This document shows, piece by piece, positions 10,473 to 43,583 of a stretch of DNA of 64,000 nucleotides. Numbering within the stretch: the first letter of the stretch is position 1; each line of letters starts with the position of its first letter. The DNA lies in sequence record MT135025.1; one strand, 5' to 3'. Position numbers and translations under genes: made by a program. A model generated the notes under the pieces. That model saw only the letters and a list, made by a program, of their open reading frames with translations, did not search any database and had not been told where the DNA came from.

Positions 10473-10481
10473 GGTAGATAC

Positions 10482-29976: not shown

Positions 29977-31413
29977 TTAAAAGCTGTAGCGATCAACGCC
30001 TACAGTTTTCAGCATGATCTTGACTGGCTCAAGCTCACCACCCAACAATGAAGTCAGGATAGATGGGCTACAACCCGATACCAGTGCAGTACCCGCTTCG
30101 CCAGCTTTAACCGGAACGTTGCCAAGACGACCACGAATGTTCCAGAAGACTAGTTGTGGCATTTCATAGCCAGCACGTGCGTACATAGCTTTGATTGCGT
30201 CGAAGTTTGCACGTTCGCCGCGACCATACCAGCCGCCACCAGTGTTTGCTTGGTCGAATTCCATGTCGCTCATGATAAGCAACTTGGTTGGCATTTCTTC
30301 TTGTGAAAGATTTGCACGTTTCGCACGCTCTAACAGAACGTTAAAGCATTTACCGATGTTTGTGCTCATGTCTTCACCTGAGCGATTCATGTTGTCAAGA
30401 CGCTCTTTTAGTGAGCTACCGCGCAACTGGTGGAAGTGCGGATCGCTTGAGAACGAAATGAACTGATCTTTGAAGATGCCTTCATTGCGTTCAGCAACAT
30501 AGATGCCAAGAGACATTGCAACTTGCTTACAAGTCACACCCGAACGATCTGTACCTGCGTTGATTGGCGTGCTCATAGAGCCAGATACGTCAACAACAGG
30601 GATGATGCGCTCATCAGAGCCTTCCATGTAGTTCGGCAGAGCTTTCCATTGCTCGTTCGCTACAGACGCATTGCCATGACTAACGCTCTTAACGACATCA
30701 TATGGGAACAATGCACCAGCGTTGATCTTCGCTTCACCTTTTTGAAGTGACTCGATGTAGCTTGTGTAACGAGCAGAAGCGTTACGACCGAATGCTTGTT
30801 GATAACGAGCAGACGCTACAGATGGCAACTTACCAAAGTCGATTGCATCCCATTCTTGAGCACACATCTTCTGTTCAACAGTGTCAGACAAAAGTGCTAG
30901 AATCTTACGCCACTGCTTCGCAGTTACACCAAGAGACTTGATTGTGCGCTTGAACACATGACCGTTTTTGCTGTTTTCACGTGGGAACCACTTAGCAGCA
31001 AGACCGTTCTTGTCGTTTACAATCGCGTTTGACCACAATGTGATCGCGTCTTTCTCAAGACTTGTACCGAACGCAGAAATCAAGTCGTCGAAACGACCTA
31101 GTTCTGGAATTTTCGACATTACAGCACGAGCTACGTCAGGCTGCTCATTACAAAGTTTAGTGAATAGAGTACGGAAAGTACCACGTTCACCCGCACCACC
31201 GCGAACATCACGAGACCATAAAAGAATGCGTGTCGCTAGTTCGGGGTTTTCTGCAAACGCACGACCGAACAGTGTTTTAGACTGATCGTTACCACGCATA
31301 GCAGCAATACCGAAGAACAAGTTTAGACACTCGTTACCTGAAGTGCTGTGAGTAACTGCACCGTTTGCTGTACGTGAATCGTTTGATTGCATAGCGTTCA
31401 TAAATGCTGACAT
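29977..31413 (-). CDS. Ro60/TROVE-like DUF2828 protein with C-terminal vWA domain
   Basis: RTANGA..STSGNECLNLF, RDVRGGAGER, GRFDDL, AKWFPRE, VVDVSGSM, SDMEFD, VFWN. Confidence 0.85.
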   Translation of the reverse strand: MSAFMNAMQSNDSRTANGAVTHSTSGNECLNLFFGIAAMRGNDQSKTLFGRAFAENPELATRILLWSRDVRGGAGERGTFRTLFTKLCNEQPDVARAVMSKIPELGRFDDLISAFGTSLEKDAITLWSNAIVNDKNGLAAKWFPRENSKNGHVFKRTIKSLGVTAKQWRKILALLSDTVEQKMCAQEWDAIDFGKLPSVASARYQQAFGRNASARYTSYIESLQKGEAKINAGALFPYDVVKSVSHGNASVANEQWKALPNYMEGSDERIIPVVDVSGSMSTPINAGTDRSGVTCKQVAMSLGIYVAERNEGIFKDQFISFSSDPHFHQLRGSSLKERLDNMNRSGEDMSTNIGKCFNVLLERAKRANLSQEEMPTKLLIMSDMEFDQANTGGGWYGRGERANFDAIKAMYARAGYEMPQLVFWNIRGRLGNVPVKAGEAGTALVSGCSPSILTSLLGGELEPVKIMLKTVGVDRYSF

Positions 31414-31448
31414 TGTTTATTCCTCATATTAAATTGCTGTAAAATGTC
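31409..31448 (-). promoter_or_regulatory. Translation-initiation hairpin of the Ro-like gene carrying the CAGCAA motif
   Basis: RNA GACAUU UUA CAGCAA uuuaauau GAGGA auaaac AAUGUC; helix includes the AUG, SD lies in the loop. Confidence 0.7.
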
Positions 31449-31462
31449 GTTTTGATGTGATG

Positions 31463-34106: not shown

Positions 34107-34484
34107 TCATGAGAAAATGTGTTTTCGGCTCAACTGCACATCAAATTCATTTTCGAAGCGACAGCGTTCAGTCCCGTAAAGTACATCATCAAGCGTGAAT
34201 CGTTTTCGCTTTCGTGTGTGAAGGTTCATATAACGCTCTAGAGCAGTGTCTGAGTCGAATTCAATACGTTCACAACGTCTTTGTTCGGATGTCTGTGAAT
34301 AATCGCTTACAGTGCGATACAGAAACAATCCGCGTACCACTACTGCGTTAAGTGTATTTGAACTTTTGATTGTCACGCCGTCAATATTTTCATAACGACT
34401 CAAGGTAAAGATTATCTCTGAGTCTGGCATTTCAGCGACGCGCTTCATTTTGGATATTGATGTTCGTTTGTTTGATTTGTACAT
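34107..34484 (-). CDS. Hypothetical protein
   Basis: GAGG RBS before ATG at 34484. Confidence 0.7.
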   Translation of the reverse strand: MYKSNKRTSISKMKRVAEMPDSEIIFTLSRYENIDGVTIKSSNTLNAVVVRGLFLYRTVSDYSQTSEQRRCERIEFDSDTALERYMNLHTRKRKRFTLDDVLYGTERCRFENEFDVQLSRKHIFS

Positions 34485-34530
34485 AGTTATCACCTCATAA
34501 TGACTGTACATGATTTATCATGCGCTATAA

Positions 34531-34557
34531 ACAAAAAAACCTGCTCAAGGCAGGTTC
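34531..34557 (-). terminator. Terminator closing the RNA cluster
   Basis: aacctgc-cttga-gcagg + T8 on the minus strand. Confidence 0.75.
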
Positions 34558-34563
34558 TAATGT

Positions 34564-34824
34564 GCAATACACAGACATTCGAGAAGTGTTTTATCGTCTT
34601 TGCTTAAATCTCAATTGACTATCTCGATGTTTCTCATCGAGAAAATACCCATGATTCGGCATGAGACCTATTTCGTTTTACAGTACGAACACCGTCTTAA
34701 TGGTCATTTCCTACCACGAGAATGCGACAGGCTCACGTCATCACTGAGAAAGCAGCTAGTGCGCCTCATTACTATTAAAGTTTGCTTCTTTGATTAGTAA
34801 TATTGCTGTACAATGTCTTATTGC
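34564..34824 (-). ncRNA. Large structured RNA L1 (261 nt) with terminal helix + CAGCAA
   Basis: 5' GCAAUA-AGACAUU pairs with 3' AAUGUCU-UAUUGC; core shared with L2. Confidence 0.7.
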
Positions 34825-34829
34825 GAATT

Positions 34830-34918
34830 TGGCGGAGATACTGGGAATCGAACCCAGAGAACGCTATTAACGTCCGACACCTTAGCAGGGTGCTGTCATA
34901 CCTTTAGACCATATCTCC
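34830..34918 (-). tRNA. tRNA-Ser(GCU)
   Basis: Cloverleaf with long variable arm, CCA. Confidence 0.92.
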
Positions 34919-34923
34919 GTAGA

Positions 34924-35103
34924 TCATTTCTTACCACGCTCTGCTTTGCTAATCTCGACAGCAGCGATTTGCGCGTTGGCTTCTTTCTCAGTGTCATGAG
35001 TACCAAGTACTCGACCTTTAGATGAAAGAGCAACCCATTTGTCGCCACGCTTCTCGACTTTCTCAACAAGCTTGTGGTATTCATCAAACGTTTTAAGTTT
35101 CAT
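34924..35103 (-). CDS. 59-aa putative internal head protein (missed by ORF track)
   Basis: TATAAATA late promoter, GAGG RBS, MKLKTFDEYHKLVE...GDKW...LGTHDTEKEANAQ. Confidence 0.75.
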   Translation of the reverse strand: MKLKTFDEYHKLVEKVEKRGDKWVALSSKGRVLGTHDTEKEANAQIAAVEISKAERGKK

Positions 35104-35154
35104 TTGTCATCCCTCAGTTAGTTTATTGTATTTATAACTGAACGACTTTTAAAC

Positions 35155-35355
35155 AGTGGCATGCTGCTCTCATGCTCAGACACATATTTGCTCTTATTGC
35201 AGGCGTGTGCCACGCGCAGCGCAGATCCCTTTTGATAATTTAATGACCAGCGGGACTCTTAGCAGGTCTTACACATAGCCTTTCAGCTATATCTTCTTTT
35301 AAGACCATAGTGTCGTACGGTCTAATCACTCTCTTTCGATTCGCGTTGCTAAGTG
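35155..35355 (-). ncRNA. Unidentified multi-hairpin RNA
   Basis: Non-coding; hairpins at 35159-35175, 35275-35290, 35302-35323. Confidence 0.45.
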
Positions 35356-35359
35356 AATT

Positions 35360-35436
35360 TGGTGCCCAACCCGAGATTCGAACTCGGATCATCTAGTGTT
35401 TGAAACTAGCGCCTCTGCCAATTGGACTAGTTGGGC
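35360..35436 (-). tRNA. tRNA-Leu(CAA)
   Basis: Cloverleaf, CCA. Confidence 0.92.
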
Positions 35437-35439
35437 TTG

Positions 35440-35550
35440 AATGAGCTGCCGCAACTCTTTAATCCCTAACGCCTGTCAGCTTTCGCCCGGCTGAGACCGT
35501 TTTCAACGGCGGTAGTCTAGCTTCGTGTAGAACGCGGCTTATGCTAGAGT
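35440..35550 (-). ncRNA. Unidentified GC-rich structured RNA
   Basis: GCCGC/GCGGC closure; CCGUU-GAA-AACGG and UCAGC..GCUGA hairpins. Confidence 0.45.
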
Positions 35551-35551
35551 T

Positions 35552-35628
35552 TGGTACGCACGGGCGGATTCGAACCGCCATCCCTGAGATTTTAAGCCTC
35601 ATGCCTCTGCCAATTGGACCACGTGCGC
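35552..35628 (-). tRNA. tRNA-Leu(UAA)
   Basis: Cloverleaf, CCA. Confidence 0.92.
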
Positions 35629-35630
35629 AG

Positions 35631-35704
35631 TGGAGCCCGAACAGAGAATCGAACTCTGACCGCGGGATTTGCAATCCCTCATACTTCCATTATACGATTC
35701 GGGC
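35631..35704 (-). tRNA. tRNA-Cys(GCA)
   Basis: Cloverleaf, CCA. Confidence 0.9.
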
Positions 35705-35712
35705 AATTTGTT

Positions 35713-35806
35713 AGTGCATTGCATGGACTACTGGCGATCTTAATGGGTATCTCAAGCATTCAGAATTCCCATGCGCTACTACAATGCTTTTTTCGCTAAA
35801 TGCACT
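35713..35806 (-). ncRNA. Unidentified RNA with 8-bp terminal stem
   Basis: AGUGCAUU/AAUGCACU termini; inner AUGGG/CCCAU. Confidence 0.4.
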
Positions 35807-35807
35807 T

Positions 35808-35884
35808 TGGGGTGACAGACGGGGATCGAACCCGCATCTTCCGGAATCACAACCCGGGGGTATTTCCACTTCACCCACTGCCAC
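35808..35884 (-). tRNA. tRNA-His(GUG)
   Basis: Cloverleaf, C discriminator, CCA. Confidence 0.88.
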
Positions 35885-35938
35885 ACCAAAGTACACTTTG
35901 GGATGTTTACGACATCAAACGAATGCGCTCCCTGTGCA

Positions 35939-36178
35939 TTAATCAGTTTTCTTTAAGTAGATACTATCAGGCGATAGCTCTCTCGTAAACATATTTTTGA
36001 AATAAATTTCGATGTCATCAGAAGTTGTTGAAGACTCAATTTCAAGAGCACGTTCTAAAATCTTACCGCGTTTATAACCAGCGCGCCAACAGTCAAACAT
36101 AAGTCTGTCCATGCGTTTCAGTTTTTCAATTTGGTTTTGATTTACGTATTCGTGAGTTTCAAGTAATACAGGCGTCAT
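35939..36178 (-). CDS. Hypothetical protein
   Basis: GAGAAA RBS. Confidence 0.7.
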   Translation of the reverse strand: MTPVLLETHEYVNQNQIEKLKRMDRLMFDCWRAGYKRGKILERALEIESSTTSDDIEIYFKNMFTRELSPDSIYLKKTD

Positions 36179-36201
36179 AATTTATTTCTCATCATAAAGA
36201 A

Positions 36202-36275
36202 TGGTAGTCCCTAGTGGAATCGAGCCACTTCTTTCTCTGTGTAAAAGAGACGTACTGCCATTATACTAAGGGACC
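36202..36275 (-). tRNA. tRNA-Val(UAC)
   Basis: Cloverleaf; T loop CUCGAUU variant. Confidence 0.85.
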
Positions 36276-36280
36276 AAAAT

Positions 36281-36354
36281 TGGAGCGGGTACACGGACTC
36301 GAACCGAGACGAACGACTTGGAAGGACGTCATGCTACCATTACATCATACCCGC
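36281..36354 (-). tRNA. tRNA-Gly(UCC)
   Basis: Cloverleaf, CCA. Confidence 0.88.
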
Positions 36355-36358
36355 ATTG

Positions 36359-36516
36359 TTAATCTGAAGCGTCGAACAAATCACGTATTGCACGCAGATT
36401 CGTAAGCTCTACAGTAAGTGTTCTTATAAAGAACGGGTTGGTCTCTTTCGCGAGACGATTTTCAACACAGCGAATCTTATCGCGTATGTTGCCCTTGCTT
36501 AGTGTAAAGTAGTCAT
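36359..36516 (-). pseudogene. Small gene with an apparent 1-nt frameshift
   Basis: GAGGA RBS + ATG gives MTTLH*; the open frame SKGNIRDKIR... continues in a shifted frame. Confidence 0.4.
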
Positions 36517-36541
36517 GCTTCTTATCCTCTTTGCTTGAATT

Positions 36542-36617
36542 TGGTGGAGACACCGATACTCGAAATCGGATCTAATGGCTTATGAGACCATTGCTCTACC
36601 ACTTGAGCTACATCTCC
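36542..36617 (-). tRNA. tRNA-Met(CAU)
   Basis: Cloverleaf, CCA. Confidence 0.88.
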
Positions 36618-36621
36618 AAAA

Positions 36622-36840
36622 GTAGTAATTAACTCATTTAATCGCACACGGGCTGACACCATATATTCATGGTCTGAGCGAGGAACCACATAGTGGGTAC
36701 TATTACCTCATCTTAGTTTTGATTGTTTTACATGACGATAACTAGAAACGTTCATAATAATGCCACGCGATACTTCCTGTATCACGGCTAACTGAGTTAG
36801 CATATCGTGCCTTTCGGCTGTAGTGTCGTTTCCGACGAAT
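36622..36840 (-). ncRNA. Unidentified multi-hairpin RNA region
   Basis: Hairpins GUCG-GAAA-CGAC, GCC-GAAA-GGC, GCUAAC-UCA-GUUAGC, GAUAC-AGGAA-GUAUC, ACCAU..AUGGU. Confidence 0.45.
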
Positions 36841-36847
36841 TAAGTAC

Positions 36848-37061
36848 AGACAATACCGAAGTGTTTTTTCGTCTTTAACATGAATCGGAGTTGACTATCT
36901 TGTTGCTTCTCAACAAGCAAATATCGTCTGTTTCAGCGACGCGCCTATCTGACTATTTCTAGGCAGAGAGAATCTTTCCTTTCAAGCTGCACCGAAGCAC
37001 TGCCCAGGTTAAGATCATTACCATTTTTAGTAAGATTTTAATTTGTTGCTGTATATTGTCT
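36848..37061 (-). ncRNA. Large structured RNA L2 (214 nt), paralogue of L1
   Basis: AGACAAUA/UAUUGUCU termini + CAGCAA; shared core with compensatory changes. Confidence 0.7.
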
Positions 37062-37122
37062 CTCAAACCATGCTCGTGATATGCCGAAGCAAGTATCATT
37101 CGCCGCATGATAGAGCTTAATC

Positions 37123-37198
37123 TGGCATCCCCAGAGGGATTCGAACCCACAACCCACGACTTAGAAGGTCGTTGCTCTTCCAATTGAGCTATGAGGAC
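37123..37198 (-). tRNA. tRNA-Arg(UCU)
   Basis: Cloverleaf, CCA. Confidence 0.92.
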
Positions 37199-37207
37199 GT
37201 TGAAAAG

Positions 37208-37273
37208 AATTCGATCCATGAGCTATTGCGTAGAAGATGGTAGTAAAGAGACTCTACACTCATGTGATCGAAA
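37208..37273 (-). ncRNA. Long imperfect hairpin RNA
   Basis: UUCGAUC..AUGAG..UAGA / UCUA..CUCAU.GAUCGAA. Confidence 0.4.
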
Positions 37274-37275
37274 TT

Positions 37276-37350
37276 TGGTGGACACGCAGGGAGTCGAACC
37301 CTATCTTCCTCATTGCAAGTGAGGCGCTTTCCCAATTAAGCTAACGGCCC
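37276..37350 (-). tRNA. tRNA-Ala(UGC)
   Basis: Cloverleaf, CCA. Confidence 0.9.
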
Positions 37351-37357
37351 ATAATTA

Positions 37358-37567
37358 TTACAACTGTGTGATTGAAATATGATCCCAGCCGTATAGACCT
37401 TCAAGCTCTTCAATCGGCTCACCAACAATATCAGAAATATATTCAGCAACTTTTGCTTCAATTTCTTCATCAGATAGTTTTTCATCAACGGAAAAAGCAT
37501 CTTCGTTATTGTTGCCACCGAAATAGCCACCAATGTCATATTCACACCATATTGAAATATAGTTCAT
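37358..37567 (-). CDS. Acidic hypothetical protein
   Basis: GAGAA RBS before MNYISIW. Confidence 0.7.
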   Translation of the reverse strand: MNYISIWCEYDIGGYFGGNNNEDAFSVDEKLSDEEIEAKVAEYISDIVGEPIEELEGLYGWDHISITQL

Positions 37568-37592
37568 GTTATTCTCACAGTTGTTTAGAAAA

Positions 37593-37668
37593 TGGTGCCC
37601 TGACACGGATTTGAACCGCGAACCTGCTCATTACAAGTGAGCTGCACTGCCAGTTGTGCTATCAGGGC
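37593..37668 (-). tRNA. tRNA-Thr(UGU)
   Basis: Cloverleaf, CCA. Confidence 0.92.
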
Positions 37669-37674
37669 GTTACT

Positions 37675-37787
37675 GAGTGTTATTACTTGCGTCGTCCAGA
37701 CCAGAGATACCAACTCTGAAAGGGAATCGAACCCCAAACATTTCTTTTCGTAAGAAGAATATTAGTAATTGTTTGCTGAAAACACTC
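37675..37787 (-). ncRNA. YrlA-like Y RNA (permuted tRNA mimic)
   Basis: Order: terminal stem + CAGCAA, T arm (GUUCGAUU), loop-closed acceptor CAGAG/CUCUG, D arm GUC-UGGAC-GAC, 3' strand. Confidence 0.75.
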
Positions 37788-37796
37788 TTCGGTATT

Positions 37797-37870
37797 TGGC
37801 AGGGGATAACGGATTCGAACCGGTACTGCGTGAGTCAAAGTCACGTATGCTGCCTTTACATCAATCCCCT
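37797..37870 (-). tRNA. tRNA-Gln(UUG)
   Basis: Cloverleaf, CCA. Confidence 0.9.
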
Positions 37871-37889
37871 ATTATTCTTAAATTATCTT

Positions 37890-37965
37890 TGGCGGAACCG
37901 ACGGGGCTCGAACCCGCTTCCTTTCCCGTGACAGGGGAATATGCACCCAGTTACACCTCGGCTCC
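37890..37965 (-). tRNA. tRNA-Asp(GUC)
   Basis: Cloverleaf, CCA. Confidence 0.9.
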
Positions 37966-38033
37966 CCAAAGACAACTTAAATTAGTTGCTTTGTTTTTCA
38001 AGTTCACACTTAACGGTAGTGACTCTCCGAATT

Positions 38034-38109
38034 TGGCGCTTCATGTTGGACTCGAACCAACGACTCTCTGATTAACAGTCAGACACTCTACCAACTGAGT
38101 TAATGAAGC
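38034..38109 (-). tRNA. tRNA-Asn(GUU) 1
   Basis: Cloverleaf, CCA. Confidence 0.92.
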
Positions 38110-38110
38110 G

Positions 38111-38185
38111 TGGCGGGCGTGGAGAATTTCGAAATCTCGACCTTCAAGTTAACAGCTTGCTGCTCTGCCTCTGAGCTACACACCC
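38111..38185 (-). tRNA. tRNA-Asn(GUU) 2
   Basis: Cloverleaf, CCA. Confidence 0.88.
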
Positions 38186-38189
38186 TTTA

Positions 38190-38260
38190 AATTAAACAGC
38201 AATCCTTTTCTCTTTTTCCAAATAAAAGTTTTGTATTGTTTGCTGAAAGATTGCTTAATT
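38190..38260 (-). ncRNA. Minimal Y-like RNA Y2
   Basis: AGCAAUC/GAUUGCU stem + UUU CAGCAA; shares UUCAGCAAACAAU with the YrlA-like RNA. Confidence 0.6.
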
Positions 38261-38263
38261 CTG

Positions 38264-38452
38264 TTACAACGTAAACTGCTCGACTTTACAAGAGTCAACA
38301 TCGTCAAACTTTTCGATTCGTCTAGCTAACATTTTAGCCTTTCGCTCAATCGAACGATCTTCGTAACCGAATTCAGATTTGTTATTGTCACAAGCTAATG
38401 CGCTCGACTTGACAACAGTCGAATCATTCATTACCATCACTAGTCTGTACAT
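38264..38452 (-). CDS. Hypothetical protein
   Basis: GAGGTG RBS. Confidence 0.6.
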   Translation of the reverse strand: MYRLVMVMNDSTVVKSSALACDNNKSEFGYEDRSIERKAKMLARRIEKFDDVDSCKVEQFTL

Positions 38453-38468
38453 AAACACCTCTGATAAT

Positions 38469-38542
38469 TGGCAGGGACATAGAGATTCGAACTCTAACGA
38501 ACGGGTTTGGAATCCGTCATGCTGCCTTTACATCATGTCCCT
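38469..38542 (-). tRNA. tRNA-Trp(CCA)
   Basis: Cloverleaf, CCA. Confidence 0.9.
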
Positions 38543-38548
38543 AAAATT

Positions 38549-38622
38549 TGGTAGCCCCAGACAGACTCGAACTGTCAACGTGCGATTATCGGTCGCGTGT
38601 TTTACCGTTAAACTATGGAGCT
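38549..38622 (-). tRNA. tRNA-Ile(GAU)
   Basis: Cloverleaf; loop CCGAUAA (C33). Confidence 0.85.
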
Positions 38623-38686
38623 AAAGTGAGCACATTACAGTGCTCGTGTTAATCGGTTAAGCGACTAAACTTCCCGGTTAACTAAT

Positions 38687-38785
38687 TGGCGGAAGACTAG
38701 GGATTCGAACCCTAACATCACCTCCCGGTGACCGACGGTTTTCAAGACCGTTGCCGCTACCCAGAATCTTTCGGCTAAGCCTTCC
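38687..38785 (-). tRNA. tRNA-Ser(UGA) with enlarged D loop
   Basis: Long variable arm; D loop AAAGAUUCUGGGUA. Confidence 0.85.
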
Positions 38786-38792
38786 ATTAATT

Positions 38793-38869
38793 TGGTTGCG
38801 TGGGGCTGGATTCGAACCAGCGTTCTCCGGCTTATGAGACCGACGAGATGACCACTTCTCTACCCCGCA
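38793..38869 (-). tRNA. tRNA-Met(CAU), initiator-like
   Basis: GCGGGGUAGAGAAG..UCGUCGG body; one bulged acceptor nucleotide. Confidence 0.8.
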
Positions 38870-38879
38870 ATTATTCAAC

Positions 38880-38963
38880 AGCTTGCGTTCTTTGGTCTGT
38901 TTATCGCTGTCTGAGTACTCGTCTAGCGATCAATAGATTAAGTTGAATTGCAGTATGCAAGCT
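38880..38963 (-). ncRNA. Minimal Y-like RNA Y3
   Basis: AGCUUGC/GCAAGCU stem + AUA CUGCAA; inner AUCGCU/AGCGAU helix. Confidence 0.6.
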
Positions 38964-38968
38964 AAAAC

Positions 38969-39054
38969 TGGTGGAGCGTAGAGGAATCGAACCTCTCTAC
39001 CCGTTAAGGGTCAGGGATTTACAGTCCCCTGTCTCACCTTGAGACGTACGCTCC
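38969..39054 (-). tRNA. tRNA-Tyr(GUA)
   Basis: Cloverleaf with variable arm, CCA. Confidence 0.9.
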
Positions 39055-39060
39055 AGAATA

Positions 39061-39135
39061 TGGTTCTCCCGACGAGATTCGAACTCGCGCACTTCACCTT
39101 GAAAGGGTGATGACCTACCGTTAGTCCACGGGAGA
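39061..39135 (-). tRNA. tRNA-Glu(UUC)
   Basis: Cloverleaf, CCA. Confidence 0.92.
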
Positions 39136-39198
39136 ATTAAATTGTATATTGATTTGCAAGCTATTTAACTCGCAAAGCGATACACAATGTATCTAATT

Positions 39199-39275
39199 TG
39201 GTACGCCGCCCTGGACTCGAACCAGACACCTGAGAGTTAAAAGCTCCCTGCTCTTCCATGATGAGCTACCGACGC
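39199..39275 (-). tRNA. tRNA-Lys(UUU) 1
   Basis: Cloverleaf, CCA. Confidence 0.9.
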
Positions 39276-39286
39276 ATTATAAAATC

Positions 39287-39361
39287 TGGTGGGTCGCATG
39301 AGATTCGAACTCACACCGGTCTGGTTAAAAGCCAGATGTACTACCGTTATACGAACGACCC
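39287..39361 (-). tRNA. tRNA-Lys(UUU) 2
   Basis: Cloverleaf, CCA. Confidence 0.9.
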
Positions 39362-39367
39362 AGAATG

Positions 39368-39442
39368 TGGTGCACCCCCTCGGAATCGAACCGAGCACTG
39401 CGGGACTTCAATCCGCCGCTTTTCCTGATAAGCTAAGGGTGC
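39368..39442 (-). tRNA. tRNA-Phe(GAA)
   Basis: Cloverleaf; loop UUGAAGU. Confidence 0.85.
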
Positions 39443-39443
39443 A

Positions 39444-39520
39444 TGGTACGCATGAAGAGATTCGAACTCTTATCATTCGGCTTCTAAGACCGACGCCTCT
39501 GCCAATTGGGCTACATGCGC
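39444..39520 (-). tRNA. tRNA-Leu(UAG)
   Basis: Cloverleaf, CCA. Confidence 0.9.
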
Positions 39521-39545
39521 ATTAAATTTTGTAAACTTCTTTTCT

Positions 39546-39576
39546 TCATTGTACATGATGTTTATATCGTTGTAAA
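39546..39576 (-). promoter_or_regulatory. T4-like early promoter within the RNA cluster
   Basis: GTTTAC-N18-TACAAT. Confidence 0.6.
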
Positions 39577-39739
39577 CATCTTTTTGAAATATTTTGAAGA
39601 ACTTAACGTTTTCATTTCTATGTGTTAATATTAACACTCACTCAAGACATCTTAAACACTAATTTGTGAAAAAGTTCGTTAAATTCTATCATCACGACAG
39701 TACTTAACGAGATACGGTCCTAAGCGTATCATATAAATT

Positions 39740-39863
39740 CAGAATGGTGAGACTTGAACTCACTTCGAGTAATAGCGTAAACTAACAGTTGTTGCCAGAG
39801 GCTATCAATTATTCTCTACCGAGTATGTTGCAACTCTGCATTTCCCCATTTCTAGGCATTCTG
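39740..39863 (-). ncRNA. tRNA-body chimera C1 (expanded anticodon arm, no CCA)
   Basis: CAGAAUG/CAUUCUG acceptor, GUGAG-UUCAAGU-CUCAC T arm, insert with AGAG/CUCU then GGCAAC. Confidence 0.6.
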
Positions 39864-39868
39864 AAATA

Positions 39869-39944
39869 TGGCACCCAATACAAGATTCGAACTTGTAACC
39901 TTCGCCTTCGTAGGGCGCTGCTCTTCCAATTGAGCTAATCGGGC
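39869..39944 (-). tRNA. tRNA-Arg(ACG)
   Basis: Cloverleaf, CCA. Confidence 0.92.
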
Positions 39945-39952
39945 ATTAAAAC

Positions 39953-40029
39953 TGGTCCGTGACAAGCGATTCGAACGCTTAACTTCTCCGCCCCAAACGG
40001 AGTACTCTACCAGATTGAGCTAGTCACGG
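39953..40029 (-). tRNA. tRNA-Pro(UGG) 1
   Basis: Cloverleaf, CCA. Confidence 0.9.
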
Positions 40030-40038
40030 ATTTTAAAT

Positions 40039-40112
40039 TGGTCGGGACGAAGAGACTCGAACTCTTACCACATGCTCCCAAAGCATGAACGCTGCCTTTA
40101 CGCCACGTCCCG
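40039..40112 (-). tRNA. tRNA-Pro(UGG) 2
   Basis: Cloverleaf, CCA. Confidence 0.9.
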
Positions 40113-40187
40113 TTTGTTCTTTAACTTTGTTTATCATACTCTGCATTCAAAGTACGTTAAACAAAATTTTTTGATTTCCTTCGCCCA

Positions 40188-40213
40188 TAAAAAAGGACGC
40201 TACGTGCGTCCTC
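40188..40213 (-). terminator. Terminator
   Basis: aggacgc-acgta-gcgtcct + T6 on the minus strand. Confidence 0.75.
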
Positions 40214-40481
40214 AAGTATACTTCTATGTTATACTATTGGACTACGTTTGTGGAGACCACTCTTGTTTCGCACACGGATTCGCTAGATACACGAATTCTG
40301 AGCGCAGAAAATCGCTGCGTAAAATCATATCAGAATGTGTATTCGAATGTGTCATGGAAACTCTCTAAACGTTAAAATAAAAATGTTTTTGTTTGTATAA
40401 TAGTACTTATAACACCAATTTTGACGATTTGCGGTATTTTCGCAGAAAATTGAAAAAAAAATTCAACTTTCTGCGATTTTC

Positions 40482-40715
40482 TTATCGACCTAGGTGTTTT
40501 CGCTTGTTCATTTCAACAAGAATTTCATCGTTGTAATGGCGGTTCAGTTCAACATACTTCTTGTGTTGATCTGAAGTCAACTCGTTAGTGTCATTCAGAT
40601 GCTTCAAGAACCCAAGAGGTTTGCGAAACGACTTGCGATATTCGTTCAGACGCTCGTCCGTTAGATTATGCAGTTGTTTCGGAGTCAGTAAAGTTTTATT
40701 GATGTCAAAACTCAT
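40482..40715 (-). CDS. Hypothetical protein
   Basis: GAGGT RBS before MSFDINK. Confidence 0.7.
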   Translation of the reverse strand: MSFDINKTLLTPKQLHNLTDERLNEYRKSFRKPLGFLKHLNDTNELTSDQHKKYVELNRHYNDEILVEMNKRKHLGR

Positions 40716-40740
40716 GTTGTACCTCACTTGTTATTAAAAT

Positions 40741-40856
40741 TGGTAGTCGGGGCTGGATTCGAACCAGCGACCACGTGCTTAACAGGCAATTGAAGGAGTG
40801 CTGGAGCGATACTTGTCAGTATCATTCTTCGTGCTCTACCACTGAGCTACCCGACT
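40741..40856 (-). ncRNA. tRNA-Asn(GUU) body with a 41-nt insert in the anticodon stem (C2)
   Basis: Removing the insert gives CGUGC-CUGUUAA-GCACG; insert has GAUACU-GACA-AGUAUC + CAGCAC. Confidence 0.8.
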
Positions 40857-40861
40857 ATGAA

Positions 40862-41383
40862 TTATTTAACTTTGAACTTCAAATTACGCCAGTCAAAGTT
40901 TCGTTTGTTCTTTGTGCTATAGAACGTGCCCCAATCAATAGCAATAGGACAGTTCTTACTCCCCACACGAGCGATAAAGACATCGTGAGTCTCGCTGTAA
41001 CGCTCTCTAAGCTCTTTTACGCGCTTATCGTAGTTAGCGATATACTCTGCACAAGCTTTGTTGTAATCAGCTTTAGAGAAGCGTTCATTGCTTGCAAAGA
41101 CACGCCCGAGGTACGGTCGAATAACACGCACTCGCTCTTTAGACCAGCCCATACTGAAGCTGTTTTCAATCTCGCCAGTGATTTTACCAGTCTTCTTACA
41201 TCTAGCAAGAATAACCCAACAACGCTCACGTCGAAAATCTTTTCGTACGTACACGTTAACGTGCTTGTCAATGTACTCTTGGTAACGAGCGTTATACTCA
41301 GCACGCAGTTTATTGCGTACTTCAGGAGACATTGCAGCGCGTTCTTCTTTCGAAAACGCTTGTGCGAATTTCAATGGTTTCAT
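40862..41383 (-). CDS. Hypothetical basic protein
   Basis: GAGGA RBS before MKPLKF. Confidence 0.8.
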   Translation of the reverse strand: MKPLKFAQAFSKEERAAMSPEVRNKLRAEYNARYQEYIDKHVNVYVRKDFRRERCWVILARCKKTGKITGEIENSFSMGWSKERVRVIRPYLGRVFASNERFSKADYNKACAEYIANYDKRVKELRERYSETHDVFIARVGSKNCPIAIDWGTFYSTKNKRNFDWRNLKFKVK

Positions 41384-41396
41384 TATAATTTCCTCT

Positions 41397-41636
41397 TGGC
41401 GCCGCTCGTGTGAATCGAACACACGTCAAACACAACACCTCGTCCACCCGATTAGAGTTTCGAAGTAAGAGCTAATCAGCATTTCGGAGCAGTCGAGCGT
41501 TATTTCTACGAGTGAGCTTTCGACAACTCACACGCACTTTCTACTCGGTCCCAGTGATTCGGTACCAACACAGGTTGCGAACCTATGTCTGCACTAATGT
41601 TGGGAAAACACTGCGTATTGTACACCAGTTAGCGGC
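41397..41636 (-). ncRNA. 240-nt tmRNA-shaped RNA with tRNA-like ends
   Basis: GCCGCU/AGCGGC acceptor, GUGUG-UUCGAUU-CACAC T arm, G-CCA end; ~190-nt multi-hairpin interior. Confidence 0.7.
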
Positions 41637-41643
41637 ATTTTAT

Positions 41644-41874
41644 TTAAAGATAGCTGTCAAATACATCATCATCAACTTCTTCAATATTGATGTCAGCGTA
41701 ACATTCATTCGCAATTGCTTGAATTTCATCTATTGAAACTGTACCTGAGTACAAAACAACAGCGTCATCCGGAATCACAACATCACACATGTATTTGTTA
41801 AACATTGCAGTTCTGAAATCAGAATCAACAGAGTAACCGTGCATTGATGTGATAACTAGCAATTTATGTGACAT
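41644..41874 (-). CDS. Hypothetical protein
   Basis: TTGACA-N17-TAGTAT promoter, GAGGA RBS. Confidence 0.75.
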   Translation of the reverse strand: MSHKLLVITSMHGYSVDSDFRTAMFNKYMCDVVIPDDAVVLYSGTVSIDEIQAIANECYADINIEEVDDDVFDSYL

Positions 41875-41951
41875 AATGTTTTCCTCGTGTAGTTGATAAT
41901 GTGTATACTACACGTTGATGAAACGCCTGTCAACAACTTTTTCAATTTTTT

Positions 41952-42028
41952 TGGTAGCCCCTCTCGGATTCGAACCGAGAACCTGACGATTATGAGTCGT
42001 CTGCTACTACCGTTACAGCTAAGGGGCT
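41952..42028 (-). tRNA. tRNA(CAU), Ile2-like
   Basis: GCCCCUUAGCU...GACUCAUAAUCG resembles lysidine tRNA-Ile2. Confidence 0.85.
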
Positions 42029-42395
42029 ATCGTTCTAGAAATCGACCGACTTTAGCAGCGAAGATGTTTGCTTCTTCTGCAATCAAAGCAGTTGATTTCA
42101 TTTGATGAAAAGCGTCTTGTTGATGCAGGACATCTAGTTTACCAGCGCATTTCATCAGTTCTTTTACTGATTGCATAATCTCAATGTTATCAATCTGACT
42201 CGTGTCAGGGTGATGGTTGAGACTATCCAAGATAGGGAGTACTTGTTGATAGTAACCCATGCCGATGAAGTTTATCATAAGTCTGTACTGCATTTCAACA
42301 GCAAATGTACAATATTTTCGAAGATTGCGTTTTACAATCTCACAACGATGCAAGATACAATCAAGCTCGTCATTTATGTCATCAAACTTATTCAT
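42027..42395 (-). CDS. Hypothetical protein
   Basis: GAGG RBS before MNKFDD. Confidence 0.7.
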   Translation of the reverse strand: MNKFDDINDELDCILHRCEIVKRNLRKYCTFAVEMQYRLMINFIGMGYYQQVLPILDSLNHHPDTSQIDNIEIMQSVKELMKCAGKLDVLHQQDAFHQMKSTALIAEEANIFAAKVGRFLER

Positions 42396-42409
42396 AAAAC
42401 CTCGAAAAT

Positions 42410-42533
42410 TGGTGGAGAGTGATGGATTTGAACCACCGACCAAAAGATTTACCTAGTTATTAAGGTTTGCAGCATGAATGCTTGTCAGTATTCTTTAACA
42501 TTCTTTTGCTCTACCAGACTGAGCTAACTCTCC
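42410..42533 (-). ncRNA. tRNA-body chimera C3 (anticodon loop replaced by motif domain, CCA present)
   Basis: AAAGA/UCUUU stem encloses GAAU-ACUGACAAGC-AUUC + AUG CUGCAA. Confidence 0.75.
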
Positions 42534-42543
42534 AGAATTTGAG

Positions 42544-42654
42544 GGTGAAGTACAGGACTCGAACCTGCGACCTCCGGCGTGCAATACATGCAGCATGAAA
42601 TCTTAACAGATTTCTTTTTAGGCCGGCATTCTAACCAACTGAACTAACTTCACC
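42544..42654 (-). ncRNA. tRNA-Asp-like body chimera C4
   Basis: CCGGC/GCCGG stem encloses GAAAUCU-GUUA-AGAUUUC + AUG CUGCAU. Confidence 0.75.
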
Positions 42655-42664
42655 AATGTAAAAA

Positions 42665-42802
42665 CATATAGTTGCGGGTGTAGGATTCGAACCTACATCA
42701 CGATCTTATGAATGATATGCGAAATTGGTTGCCGTACAGATTCTTATCAGAATCAGTTTTGTGCTACGTGTGCTACCACTTACACCAACCCGCAACTATA
42801 TG
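42665..42802 (-). ncRNA. tRNA-body chimera C5 (CAU loop retained, extended acceptor stem)
   Basis: Insert GAUUCU-GAUA-AGAAUC + UGUA CGGCAA; ~15-bp terminal helix, no CCA. Confidence 0.75.
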
Positions 42803-42869
42803 CTTTCGGGATGCTTACGCAGGTTCTTCTCTACGTAAGCACAGATCCTCAATGTATATTTTGCCTTAG

Positions 42870-43025
42870 CTAATCACAACACAACCCAATATCGTGCGCT
42901 TTAATTACGGGATTGATGACCCGTTCGCATGTGATTAGCGTAAAAGTATGATTACGCACCTTTTCTTCTTCAATGTCCAAGGCAAAGAGGACTATGAATA
43001 CCAGTGCGAGAAGATATACAATCAA
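42870..43025 (-). CDS. Small membrane protein
   Basis: GAGG RBS + TTG start; N-terminal hydrophobic stretch. Confidence 0.45.
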   Translation of the reverse strand: MIVYLLALVFIVLFALDIEEEKVRNHTFTLITCERVINPVIKAHDIGLCCD

Positions 43026-43048
43026 ATTGCTCACCTCGCTTAATAAGT

Positions 43049-43195
43049 GAGAGTACATTGGTCGAGTGTAACGGAATCGAACCGTTCCCACGATCTCCCT
43101 ATGATATGCGTAAATTGGTTGCTGAATATAATCATGTCTGATTACAGTATGCTACGTGTGCTGCCACTACACCAACACTCGACCAATATACTCTC
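43049..43195 (-). ncRNA. tRNA-body chimera C6 (paralogue of C5, extended acceptor stem)
   Basis: Insert UAAUC..GAUUA + UUCAGCAACCAAUUU; ~20-bp terminal helix. Confidence 0.75.
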
Positions 43196-43200
43196 GATAT

Positions 43201-43344
43201 TTTAAATGTGCGCTACTTGCACGCCGACTGAGCGAATTTTAACTCAGCTAGTTTTTGTTTGAGACATCGTCCGCTAAGACTATTCTCTGCATGCCAGAAC
43301 TTATACTGGCTCTATGTATTCATTTCGGCTAACGCACATTTAAA
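43201..43344 (-). ncRNA. Unidentified ~144-nt structured RNA
   Basis: 12-bp terminal stem UUUAAAUGUGCG/CGCACAUUUAAA; GCCAG..CUGGC and CUGAG..CUCAG hairpins. Confidence 0.55.
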
Positions 43345-43349
43345 ATATT

Positions 43350-43583
43350 ACTCATCTTCAGAGAAGAGACAGAAACGATGAGTCTAGTCTGTTTAATCAA
43401 TGTTGTTCATCTTCAAGAAGAGGCGAGAACGATGAACTTAGCTCGCTTAATCAATTGTGTTAATCTTATCAGCTTCTCAGCGAAAGTCAACATCTTTTTT
43501 CAAATATTTCATCGAGTTGAAAGTTTGTTTTCTGTCTCTCGACTCGATGAAATACATTCTACATCCTTTTCAGATGAAGTCAA
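43350..43583 (-). promoter_or_regulatory. Tandem promoters and structured leader of the RNA operon
   Basis: TTGACT-N16-TAGAAT (43583-43556), TTGACT-N16-TAAGAT (43490-43463); three leader hairpins. Confidence 0.7.

What the first reader, a model, noticed from the sequence alone, without database searches (positions are those of the whole stretch)
37675..37787. YrlA-like Y RNA inside the tRNA array
Seen: 5' stem strand, T arm (GGGG-UUCGAUU-CCC), acceptor stem closed by a loop (CAGAG-uugguau-CUCUG), D arm (GUC-UGGAC-GAC), 3' stem strand. Established: this permuted order is the defining architecture of bacterial YrlA Y RNAs, found with Ro orthologues. Here it lies about 6 kb from the Ro-like gene, so proximity-based searches could miss it.
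Basis: partly seen in the sequence, partly recalled or inferred. Interest (0 to 1): 0.75.

Follow-up and report, generated by a model that had tools for sequence, protein, structure and literature searches.

The report
Phage Y-like RNA with tRNA-like insert
A conserved small RNA in the transfer-RNA cluster of a KVP40-like Vibrio phage has the layout of a bacterial Y RNA, but belongs to a separate, widespread and undescribed RNA family found beside phage genes for a Ro60-shaped protein.

Summary
On the minus strand, 37675-37787 folds as terminal stem, V hairpin, T arm, closed acceptor-like hairpin and small D-like hairpin. It fills the spacer between tRNA-Gln and tRNA-Thr. Ten Vibrio phage versions (70-100% identical) keep 98.9% of pairs, with 7 compensatory pairs.

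The layout is YrlA-like, and the DUF2828/DUF7788 gene 6.3 kb downstream on the same strand has a Ro60 fold with a MIDAS motif. However, Rfam YrlA (RF02553) gives no hit even at E<=10, the CGAA motif is absent and the protein is not Pfam TROVE.

The RNA instead carries a different core: AAG, a 6-8 bp stem and U[UA]C[AC]GCAA at the 5' end, and stem-C[UA]G at the 3' end. In 80 viral contigs encoding DUF2828 homologues this signature occurs 67 times on the gene's strand and 0 times on the other strand or in reversed controls. Members are short (about 55 nt), long with T-AS-D inserts, or sit in place of a tRNA's anticodon arm. Short forms match Rfam's Dictyostelium Class I RNA model below threshold.

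Best reading: the RNA partner of the phage Ro-like protein, released by tRNA processing. Expression and binding are untested.

The parts
37673..37789 (-). The small RNA as modelled (AAG...CAG). The whole inter-tRNA spacer is 37669-37796.
   Evidence: CM R1 scores 135.5 bits, the only strong hit in the window. Alignments A1 and A3.
37781..37787 (-). 5' strand of the terminal stem (GAGUGUU)
   Evidence: Pairs with 37675-37681. All 7 pairs are kept in 10 of 10 sequences, with one U-A to U-G change.
37771..37780 (-). Conserved single-stranded motif UUCAGCAAAC, a bulge on the 5' strand and the proposed protein-binding site
   Evidence: CAGCAA is invariant in all Vibrio phage versions. The same motif follows the 5' stem in the family members found in unrelated contigs.
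37742..37759 (-). V hairpin (UUCUU / AAGAA)
   Evidence: The stem is invariant in 10 of 10 sequences while the loop varies. There is no covariation.
37721..37735 (-). T arm with the canonical T loop UUCGAUU
   Evidence: Three of four pairs show compensatory changes. The base pair occurs as G-U, A-U, G-C, C-G and U-A.
37702..37718 (-). Acceptor-like stem closed by the conserved loop UUGGUAU
   Evidence: Three of five pairs show compensatory changes.
37691..37701 (-). Miniature D-like hairpin with GG in its loop
   Evidence: The stem is kept (one U-A to U-G change) and GG is kept in all versions.
37675..37681 (-). 3' strand of the terminal stem, followed by AG (37674-37673)
37797..37870 (-). Upstream tRNA-Gln with encoded CCA. 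Its 3' processing would set the RNA's 5' end.
37593..37668 (-). Downstream tRNA-Thr. RNase P cleavage at its 5' end would set the RNA's 3' end.
29977..31413 (-). Gene for the Ro60-like protein (DUF2828 + DUF7788; KVP40.0300 'RNA-binding protein'), the proposed partner
   Evidence: Pfam. AF2 model pLDDT 76. The top Foldseek hits are all Ro60/TROVE proteins. The DxSxS MIDAS motif is invariant.
38197..38256 (-). Short sibling RNA (stem + UUCAGCAAAC, no tRNA-like part)
   Evidence: CM R2, built without any Vibrio phage sequence: 41.7 bits, E 6e-9. Rfam Dicty_Class_I_RNA: 27.4 bits, full length.
31407..31450 (-). Family-like hairpin holding the Shine-Dalgarno sequence and start codon of the Ro-like gene
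   Evidence: R2: 22.5 bits, E 0.0014. The counterpart in phage F86 is L003:3816-3861.
42413..42653 (-). Two tandem 'long tRNAs' (42544-42653 and 42413-42533) whose anticodon arm is replaced by the same stem + motif, closed by a loop. This is the circular permutation of the target.
   Evidence: Rfam tRNA hits of 110 and 121 nt with inserts. Sequences read. KVP40 annotates them as tRNA-Pseudo-4 and -5.

Best explanation
The element is a stable small RNA of about 113-128 nt. It is made as part of the long tRNA-array transcript and set free by ordinary tRNA processing: RNase P cutting at tRNA-Thr gives its 3' end, and 3' maturation of tRNA-Gln gives its 5' end.

Its two ends pair into a 7-bp stem. 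Directly after the 5' strand lies an unpaired, invariant UUCAGCAAAC. This stem plus motif is proposed to be the handle by which the phage's own Ro60-shaped ring protein (DUF2828/DUF7788, 6.3 kb downstream on the same strand) holds the RNA, as Ro60 holds Y RNAs. The rest of the RNA folds into a permuted, anticodon-less tRNA body (V, T arm, closed acceptor stem, small D hairpin with GG). That body would form a tRNA 'elbow', which could bring the particle to tRNA-recognising enzymes or tRNA-like substrates.

Shown here: the conserved structure, the Ro60 fold of the protein, and the strand-specific co-occurrence of this RNA signature with DUF2828 genes in many phage lineages. Inferred: expression, processing sites, binding, and the downstream role. 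The most likely role is RNA surveillance or counter-defence during infection.
For: Structure. 98.9% of cells pair, 7 pairs are compensatory, and 0 of 500 shuffles reach this.

Partner. Ro60 is the only full-length structural match. The MIDAS motif DxSxS is invariant. One Atlas DUF2828 cluster also carries Pfam TROVE in 16% of members.

Association. A model built from the Vibrio RNAs found 33 of 34 hits on the gene's strand in 80 contigs encoding 46-55%-identical homologues. The strict signature scan gave 67 hits on the gene strand, 0 on the opposite strand and 0 in both reversed controls over 1.27 Mb. Density peaks 0-500 nt after the stop codon.

Spread. The signature also occurs between the tRNAs just after the homologue in Felixounavirus skuden. 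Three copies lie in tandem after the 'Ro-like RNA binding protein' of mycobacteriophage DyoEdafos, the middle one with a full T-AS-D module. Several contigs carrying short forms have no tRNA nearby, so the link is to the protein gene and not to tRNAs. T4, which has a tRNA cluster and gave no DUF2828 match, has none.

Link to YrlA. One family member's T-AS-D module matches Rfam YrlA positions 24-84 (41.9 bits, E 1e-7).

Transcription. No promoter-like or terminator-like site flanks the element.

Functional context. The Ro60-like gp130 of Felixounavirus Bas63, which lies directly upstream of the tRNAs, was shown by knockout and complementation to counter the Ppl defence system (PMC11482910).
Against: There is no expression or binding evidence. 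The only public runs found were low-depth contigs of related phages.

The gene and the RNA are 6.3 kb apart, with about ten genes and ten tRNAs between them.

The reverse test (does the RNA signature predict a nearby DUF2828 gene?) failed for technical reasons.

The D hairpin and V stem never vary, so they are unproven. The D hairpin is far from a real D arm.

Model R2, built from short forms, matches the target's 5' half only weakly (16.7 bits, E 0.06) and mis-assigns the 3' partner.

That Bas63 gp130 is the orthologue of this protein is inferred from genus-wide conservation and gene position. It was not checked on the Bas63 sequence.
Confidence: 0.6

Rival explanations
1. It is a tRNA mimic that works without the Ro-like protein. 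For example, it could be a decoy or sponge for a host tRNA-cleaving defence nuclease or for a tRNA-modifying or processing enzyme. Having no anticodon, it cannot be inactivated or decoded.
For: It has a canonical T loop, GG in the D-like loop and a closed acceptor stem. It lies within a tRNA array. Five neighbouring 'long tRNAs' also lack an anticodon arm.
Against: This does not explain the invariant UUCAGCAAAC and the terminal stem. Both are shared with short RNAs that have no tRNA-like part and sit next to DUF2828 genes in contigs without tRNAs.
Confidence: 0.15
2. It is a cis-acting spacer structure of the tRNA precursor, a relic of a tRNA dimer, that only guides or paces processing of the neighbouring tRNAs and has no life of its own.
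For: It exactly fills a tRNA-tRNA spacer. Tandem tRNAs can imitate the T-acceptor-D order. This is seen in the window at 42475-42596, 39223-39339 and 39984-40093, which give sub-threshold YrlA hits. Chen et al. warn about this artefact.
Against: The acceptor-like stem is closed by a conserved 7-nt loop and covaries as a hairpin, so it is not two tRNA ends. Both flanking tRNAs are complete. The same core occurs away from tRNAs.
Confidence: 0.1
3. It is an ordinary member of the published YrlA family (Rfam RF02553) that the model merely misses.
For: It has the same module order. A relative's module matches the model at 41.9 bits.
Against: There is no YrlA hit at E<=10. The CGAA motif is absent, the conserved motif is different, and the partner is not a Pfam TROVE protein. 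No gathering-level YrlA hit occurred in 8 related loci.
Confidence: 0.03
4. It is a chance fold in an AT-rich spacer, conserved only because the phages are close relatives.
For: The single-sequence fold is not better than shuffles (z = -0.54). Most aligned phages are closely related.
Against: Compensatory changes occur in two helices. The slid-partner controls, which keep relatedness, fall to 45-64% pairing with 0-2 compensatory pairs. The motif and the stem logic recur in unrelated contigs.
Confidence: 0.02

Closest known systems
YrlA, the bacterial and phage Y RNA with a tRNA-like domain (Rfam RF02553; Chen et al. 2014, PMC4201824)
   Same: The 5' and 3' ends pair. Inside lie a V hairpin, a T arm, an acceptor-like stem closed by a loop, and a D arm, i.e. 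a tRNA permuted at the anticodon. It is encoded on the same strand as a Ro60-shaped protein with a vWA/MIDAS domain. It is often accompanied by shorter siblings without the tRNA-like part, as YrlB accompanies YrlA.
   Different: The Rfam model gives no hit on this element. The conserved 5' motif is U[UA]C[AC]GCAA, not GNCGAA. The D arm is reduced to 3 bp with a 5-nt loop and the U8/A9 linker is missing. The partner belongs to Pfam DUF2828/DUF7788, not TROVE. The RNA is 6.3 kb from the gene and embedded in a tRNA array.
Dictyostelid Class I RNAs (Rfam RF01414; Kjellin et al. 2021, PMC7919456)
   Same: A short stem joins the two ends. An invariant 5' G pairs with the C of a conserved 3' CUG(U). 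An unpaired motif ..UUACAGCAA lies directly after the 5' strand. The rest is variable and A-rich. Five phage short forms align to the full Rfam model at 22.8-27.4 bits, each at the pre-identified site and strand.
   Different: All scores are below the gathering score of 41.5. The target itself is 113 nt, carries a tRNA-like insert and ends in CAG. Class I RNAs are nuclear genes with a DUSE promoter and were reported as unique to Dictyostelia. The one protein shown to bind them directly is the RRM protein Rnp1A/CIBP. Whether this is homology or convergence is open.
Phage T4 rnaC and rnaD (species 1 and 2 stable RNAs in the tRNA cluster)
   Same: They are stable RNAs of unknown function at the end of the tRNA cluster, in the syntenic region (genes 3, 1, 57A, 57B upstream). 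rnaC has a T arm.
   Different: They lack the U[UA]C[AC]GCAA motif and the terminal-stem signature. T4 gave no DUF2828 match.
Thermus phage phiLo Ro60 with Yrl1 and Yrl2 (PMC12135203)
   Same: A phage-encoded Ro60-type ring protein with phage-encoded Y-like RNAs next to it. Binding was shown there, and a complex with host PNPase was found.
   Different: That protein is a recognisable Ro60 homologue. Its RNAs carry the CGAA motif and no tRNA-like module is reported.

Membership tests
YrlA (Rfam RF02553) | Scores at or above the family's covariance-model threshold (69 bits) | tested here: not met
   There was no YrlA hit on 37500-37950 at E<=10 or on 34400-43400 at E<=5. The model is present in the library, as it hit L039.
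YrlA (Rfam RF02553) | Terminal stem enclosing V, T arm, closed acceptor-like stem and D arm, in that order | tested here: met
   MFE fold and RNAalifold consensus. The T and AS stems covary.
YrlA (Rfam RF02553) | GNCGAAN0-1G motif near the 5' end (likely Ro contact) | tested here: not met
   Read directly from alignment A1. The conserved 5' block is GAGUGUUU[UA]CAGCAA. The only CGAA lies in the V loop of V07 and is not kept in relatives.
YrlA (Rfam RF02553) | Near-invariant D arm with tRNA D-loop features | tested here: inconclusive
   The hairpin has a 3-bp stem and a 5-6 nt loop that keeps GG. There is no A14/R15/A21 equivalent. Relatives in other contigs have canonical D arms.
YrlA (Rfam RF02553) | Within 4 kb of, and on the same strand as, a TROVE-domain Ro60 orthologue | tested here: not met
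   The strand is the same, but the distance is about 6.3 kb. The protein has a Ro60 fold but hits Pfam DUF2828 + DUF7788, not TROVE.
YrlA (Rfam RF02553) | tRNA-type modifications; RNase P and CCA-adding enzyme substrate; bound by Rsr | not testable with these tools
   These need experiments.
DUF2828-associated Y-like RNA (family defined here) | AAG, a 6-8 bp terminal stem, 0-1 nt, then U[UA]C[AC]GCA at the 5' end, and stem-C[UAC]G at the 3' end; same strand as a DUF2828 gene | tested here: met
   The target passes the strict scan. That scan gave 67, 0, 0 and 0 hits on the gene strand, the opposite strand and the two reversed controls in 80 loci.
DUF2828-associated Y-like RNA (family defined here) | Hit by a covariance model built only from members outside the Vibrio phages (R2) | tested here: inconclusive
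   The target's 5' half is matched at 16.7 bits (E 0.06) with a wrong 3' partner, because the 85-nt insert exceeds what the short-form model allows. The short sibling at 38197-38256 scores 41.7 bits.
Dictyostelid Class I RNA (Rfam RF01414) | Covariance-model score at or above 41.5 bits; length 42-65 nt | tested here: not met
   The target gives no hit and is 113 nt long. The short siblings reach 22.8-27.4 bits.
Dictyostelid Class I RNA (Rfam RF01414) | End-joining stem with an invariant 5' G paired to the C of a 3' CUG(U), and an unpaired ..UUACAGCAA motif after the 5' strand | tested here: met
   The target has G...C then AG, and UUUUCAGCAAAC. In 41 phage short forms G3-C76 and CAGCA are invariant, the following A is kept in at least 90%, and the 3' end is C-N-G with invariant C and G. 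The Class I features are taken from PMC7919456.
tRNA | Cloverleaf recognised by ARAGORN or by Rfam RF00005 | tested here: not met
   Neither tool calls anything in 37669-37796.
Ro60/TROVE proteins (for the proposed partner) | HEAT-repeat ring followed by a vWA domain with a MIDAS motif | tested here: met
   The AF2 model shows helical repeats at 1-260 and an alpha/beta domain at 270-470. The top six PDB hits are all Ro60. The top Swiss-Prot hits are Rsr, RO60 and telomerase p80. D275-S277-S279 are invariant.
Ro60/TROVE proteins (for the proposed partner) | Sequence-level membership (Pfam TROVE PF05731) | tested here: not met
   Pfam gives only DUF7788 and DUF2828. phmmer against PDB chains finds no Ro60.

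The most novel reading that the evidence does not exclude
The element is one member of a very large, undescribed family of phage Y-like RNAs that partner with DUF2828/DUF7788 Ro-like proteins. More than 7,700 such proteins are in public data, and they occur in Straboviridae, Felixounavirus, mycobacteriophages and marine phages. The family's core (end-joining stem with G...CUG and the motif UUACAGCAA) is the same module as in the Class I RNAs of dictyostelid amoebae. On this reading Class I RNAs are not unique to Dictyostelia. They would be the eukaryotic counterparts of these RNAs, possibly serving eukaryotic DUF2828-type proteins. The module can be plugged into a tRNA body in either circular permutation.
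Probability: 0.35. Interest if true: 0.9.

Novelty: new variant of a known kind. Interest (0 to 1): 0.8.

Why it matters
Ro60 and its Y RNAs are a classic RNA-surveillance particle, but their RNA partners have been found only next to proteins annotated as TROVE. This result gives a sequence and structure signature for the RNA partners of a second, much larger Ro-like protein family common in phages. That includes model phages such as KVP40 and Felix O1.

It explains several 'pseudo-tRNAs' and long spacers in phage tRNA arrays. It also supplies concrete RNA candidates for the Ro60-like Felixounavirus protein recently shown to counter the Ppl defence system.

The resemblance to Dictyostelium Class I RNAs turns a twenty-year-old question, what those RNAs bind and do, into a direct test: do they bind a DUF2828-type protein?

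Tried and rejected
1. Expression. The look-up of sequencing runs gave two runs of unknown kind, kept as contigs. Laid on 37400-43300 they show only low-depth contigs of related phages, with no ends or direction. This was uninformative.

2. Reverse association. I scanned IMG/VR for AAAG-N4-7-TTACAGCAAA. This was inconclusive.

3. A loose scan for the loop-closed form of the module in the 80 loci showed no strand bias (38 against 35). I therefore make no statistical claim for closed forms. They rest on reading the sequences.

4. T4 rnaC and rnaD are syntenic stable RNAs and rnaC has a T arm, but neither has the motif or stem signature. I rejected them as family members.

5. Does Dictyostelium have a DUF2828 protein, and is the pull-down protein DDB_G0281243 one? 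Swiss-Prot fold hits show none, AFDB-cluster organisms are masked, the Atlas gives viral clusters only, and the Avesson 2011 paper is not held. This could not be tested.

6. The pairing statistics on alignment A4 are circular, because the sequences were selected for pairing. I use A4 only for the invariant positions.

7. The single-sequence fold energy is not significant.

Full report
WHAT THE WINDOW IS

Window 36000-40000 is 100% identical to Vibrio phage V07 (MT135025.1) and 95% identical to KVP40, a T4-related Schizotequatrovirus. The finding lies on the minus strand inside an array of at least 28 tRNA genes. It fills the whole 128-nt spacer between tRNA-Gln (37797-37870, CCA encoded) and tRNA-Thr (37593-37668). 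Neither V07 nor KVP40 annotates anything there.

THE OBSERVATION

Read as RNA, the spacer gives these parts:
- AAG, then GAGUGUU (37787-37781);
- an unpaired UUCAGCAAAC;
- an inner stem strand AUUACU;
- a V hairpin UUCUU/AAGAA (37759-37742);
- a T arm GGGG-UUCGAUU-CCCU (37735-37721);
- a hairpin CAGAG-UUGGUAU-CUCUG (37718-37702);
- a small hairpin GUC-UGGAC-GAC (37701-37691);
- AGUAAU, AACACUC (37681-37675), then AG.

The minimum-energy fold reproduces this layout, but its energy is no better than shuffles (z = -0.54). One sequence alone therefore proves nothing.

Homologues exist in 49 Vibrio phage records, down to 70-75% identity (F86 and the D482 group), always in the same syntenic place. 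On ten distinct versions, 98.9% of cells pair in the proposed structure. With partners slid by 1-3 columns, pairing is 45-64%. Seven pairs have changes on both sides: three in the T stem, three in the acceptor-like stem and one in the inner stem. None of 500 shuffles reaches the observed values. RNAalifold finds the same helices on its own. The V and D-like stems are invariant, so they are untested. No plausible ORF covers the element. No promoter-like or terminator-like site flanks it, which fits co-transcription with the tRNAs and release by tRNA processing. That last point is inference.

IS IT YrlA?

Chen et al. 2014 define YrlA by four features:
- paired ends with a GNCGAAN0-1G motif;
- V, T, acceptor-like and D stem-loops in that order;
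- location within 4 kb of a TROVE gene on the same strand;
- an Infernal model.

The order of modules is met. The rest is not.
- Rfam 15 contains YrlA (RF02553, 114 positions, threshold 69 bits). It gives no hit on the element at E<=10 in a 451-base search or at E<=5 in 9 kb.
- The CGAA-type motif is absent.
- The D hairpin is a miniature.
- The gene is 6.3 kb away.

The three sub-threshold YrlA hits in the window are tandem tRNAs. This is the artefact Chen et al. warn about.

THE PROTEIN

Window 29977-31413 (minus strand) encodes a 478-aa protein with Pfam DUF7788 and DUF2828. It is PHROG 850 'RNA-binding protein'. It has no sequence-level match to solved Ro60 chains.

An AlphaFold model built on 23 homologues (pLDDT 76) has Ro60 as its only full-length structural match:
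- in the PDB, 1yvr, 2i91, 1yvp and 9nep (E 4e-6 to 1e-4, TM about 0.57);
- in Swiss-Prot models, D. radiodurans Rsr, X. laevis and C. elegans RO60, and telomerase p80.

A DxSxS MIDAS motif is invariant. The protein is therefore Ro60-shaped but belongs to a separate sequence family. That family is very large: more than 7,700 proteins at E<=1e-5. It matches 711 phage records, including Felixounavirus, Campylobacter, Listeria, Staphylococcus, Enterococcus and Bacillus phages, and mycobacteriophages. In mycobacteriophages it is already annotated 'Ro-like RNA binding protein'.

A WIDER RNA FAMILY

A covariance model of the Vibrio RNAs (R1) was run on 80 IMG/VR loci that encode 46-55%-identical homologues. 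It returned 34 hits, 33 of them on the gene's strand.

The hits share a core that differs from YrlA's:
- 5' end: AAG, a 6-8 bp stem, then U[UA]C[AC]GCAA;
- 3' end: the complementary strand followed by C[UA]G.

A strict scan for this signature found 67 copies on the gene strand, none on the opposite strand, and none in either reversed control, over 1.27 Mb. Density is highest in the 500 nt after the stop codon.

Members come in three forms.

1. Short forms, about 46-70 nt and A-rich inside. There are 49 distinct examples. The first stem pair (G-C) and the CAGCA core of the motif are invariant, and the following A is kept in at least 90% of them.

2. Long forms. 12 of 30 contain a T arm. Some have a textbook T-AS-D module. 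L039:8758-8818 matches YrlA model positions 24-84 at 41.9 bits, E 1e-7.

3. A loop-closed form, in which the same stem and motif replace the anticodon arm of an otherwise complete tRNA. In the window these are 40744-40856, 42413-42533 and 42544-42653, which are Rfam tRNA hits with inserts and KVP40 'tRNA-Pseudo-3/4/5'. By eye, 42667-42793 and 43060-43194 are also of this form. The loop ...CUG-AYA-AG... of these forms equals the joined 3' and 5' ends of the open forms. The target is therefore the circular permutation of these 'long tRNAs'.

The target and element 43060-43194 even share UUCAGCAAnCAAUUUAC.

A model built only from non-Vibrio short forms (R2) gave these results:
- It finds the window's short sibling at 38197-38256 (41.7 bits, E 6e-9).
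- It finds a hairpin over the ribosome-binding site and start codon of the Ro-like gene, 31407-31450 (22.5 bits).
- It matches only the 5' half of the target, weakly.
- It finds nothing in T4, which has no DUF2828 gene.
- It finds a hit 43 nt after the Ro-like gene of mycobacteriophage DyoEdafos.

Reading the DyoEdafos sequence shows three tandem RNAs there. The middle one has a full T-AS-D module, a canonical D arm and the motif CACAGCAAUAAAAC. In Felixounavirus skuden the RNAs sit between the first tRNAs after the gene. Several contigs with short forms have no tRNA nearby. The link is therefore to the protein gene and not to tRNA arrays.

THE CLASS I RESEMBLANCE

Rfam's only other family to match is Dicty_Class_I_RNA (RF01414). 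The hits are full length, on the right strand, and at the pre-identified short forms:
- window 38197-38254, 27.4 bits;
- L019, 24.9 bits;
- L020, 25.4 bits;
- L073, 24.9 bits;
- L075, 22.8 bits.

There were no hits elsewhere in those searches. All are below the 41.5-bit threshold.

Kjellin et al. describe Class I RNAs as 42-65 nt long. They have a 6-bp end-joining stem, an invariant 5' G paired to the C of a 3' CUGU, and an unpaired 11-nt motif after the 5' strand. They were reported as absent outside Dictyostelia (PMC7919456). The phage core has the same features. I could not test whether dictyostelids have a DUF2828-type protein. I also could not test whether the uncharacterised pull-down protein DDB_G0281243 is one. 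Homology and convergence both remain possible.

MECHANISM

Best reading (confidence 0.6). The RNA is cut out of the tRNA precursor. The Ro-like ring protein binds it through the terminal stem and the bulged UUCAGCAAAC. The RNA displays a tRNA elbow that directs the particle to tRNA-recognising factors or substrates.

A functional hint comes from the PhageMaP preprint (PMC11482910). The Ro60-like gp130 of Felixounavirus Bas63 lies directly upstream of the tRNAs and counters the Ppl defence system. Its authors guessed that some annotated tRNAs might be Y RNAs. The gene is present in all 251 Felixounavirus-type records found. That gp130 is the orthologue of this protein is my inference.

Rivals:
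- a Ro-independent tRNA decoy (0.15);
- a purely cis-acting processing spacer (0.10);
- a true YrlA member (0.03);
- chance (0.02).

NOVELTY

Y RNAs with tRNA-like domains are known, as are phage Ro60/Y-like pairs. I found no paper that links DUF2828 proteins, KVP40 or Felix O1 to specific Y-like RNAs, or Class I RNAs to phages. The finding is a new variant of a known kind, and it belongs to a family that appears to be undescribed.

LIMITS

There are no expression or binding data. The reverse-association test failed technically. The closed forms and the DyoEdafos long form rest on reading sequences, not on statistics. The pairing statistics on A4 are circular by construction.

Noticed in passing
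window 38197-38256 (-): A 58-60 nt short RNA of the same family (stem AGCAAUCU/GGAUUGCU plus UUCAGCAAAC), lying between tRNA-Asn and a small ORF. It scores 41.7 bits with the non-Vibrio model R2 and 27.4 bits, full length, with Rfam Dicty_Class_I_RNA.
   Followed up: yes
window 31407-31450 (-): A family-like hairpin (GACAUU + UUACAGCAAUUU ... AAUGUC-AG) encloses the Shine-Dalgarno sequence and the AUG of the Ro-like gene. It is conserved in F86 (L003:3816-3861) and in the VH7D-like contig (L013, around 9964-10089). It may let the protein repress its own translation by binding a mimic of its RNA partner.
   Followed up: partly
window 40744-40856, 42413-42533, 42544-42653, 42667-42793, 43060-43194 (all -): Five 110-135 nt 'long tRNAs' have normal acceptor, D and T arms. 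In each, the anticodon arm is replaced by a hairpin (stem-CUG-AYA-AG-stem) followed by U/A-N-C-N-GCA. KVP40 calls three of them tRNA pseudogenes. Equivalents are annotated in F86, D482 and Cronobacter phage S13, next to its DUF2828 gene. 42413-42533 is followed by CCA.
   Followed up: partly
window 34573-34818, 36848-37061, 38879-38964 (all -): Further open-form candidates with the AAG-stem-UACAGCAA ... stem-CUG signature (246, 214 and 86 nt) fill other long gaps of the tRNA array. The first is followed by a terminator-like hairpin at 34558-34536. The first two are kept in KVP40, and the first also in D482.
   Followed up: partly
L093:7460-7740 (mycobacteriophage DyoEdafos): Three tandem Y-like RNAs (short, long with a canonical T-AS-D module, short) follow the 'Ro-like RNA binding protein' gene and end at a terminator. 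None is annotated, and none reaches the Rfam YrlA threshold.
   Followed up: partly
L094:9754-10528 (Escherichia phage skuden, Felixounavirus): Four family RNAs (58-125 nt) sit in the gaps between the first tRNAs, right after the vWFA/DUF2828 gene. One overlaps an annotated minus-strand 'hypothetical protein' (10397-10627).
   Followed up: partly
window 37702-37718 and 37790-37794 (-): The 7-nt loop UUGGUAU of the closed acceptor-like stem is almost invariant, unusual for a loop. It is complementary to AUACC in the 5' leader just after tRNA-Gln. This could form a pseudoknot or a processing-related pairing. No covariation was seen.
   Followed up: no
window 37279-37350 (-): Rfam calls a tRNA here (44.9 bits) that ARAGORN does not. 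KVP40 annotates the equivalent as tRNA-Pseudo-1.
   Followed up: no
whole record (MT135025.1): The V07 record is flagged UNVERIFIED_ORG. At 349 kb it is about 100 kb longer than its relatives of about 245 kb, while sister record V05 is 157 kb. This may be an assembly problem in the source records.
   Followed up: no
L042:8605-9054: A metagenomic phage contig with a DUF2828 gene and at least six family RNAs also carries a tmRNA gene (Rfam 75.4 bits) within its tRNA array.
   Followed up: no
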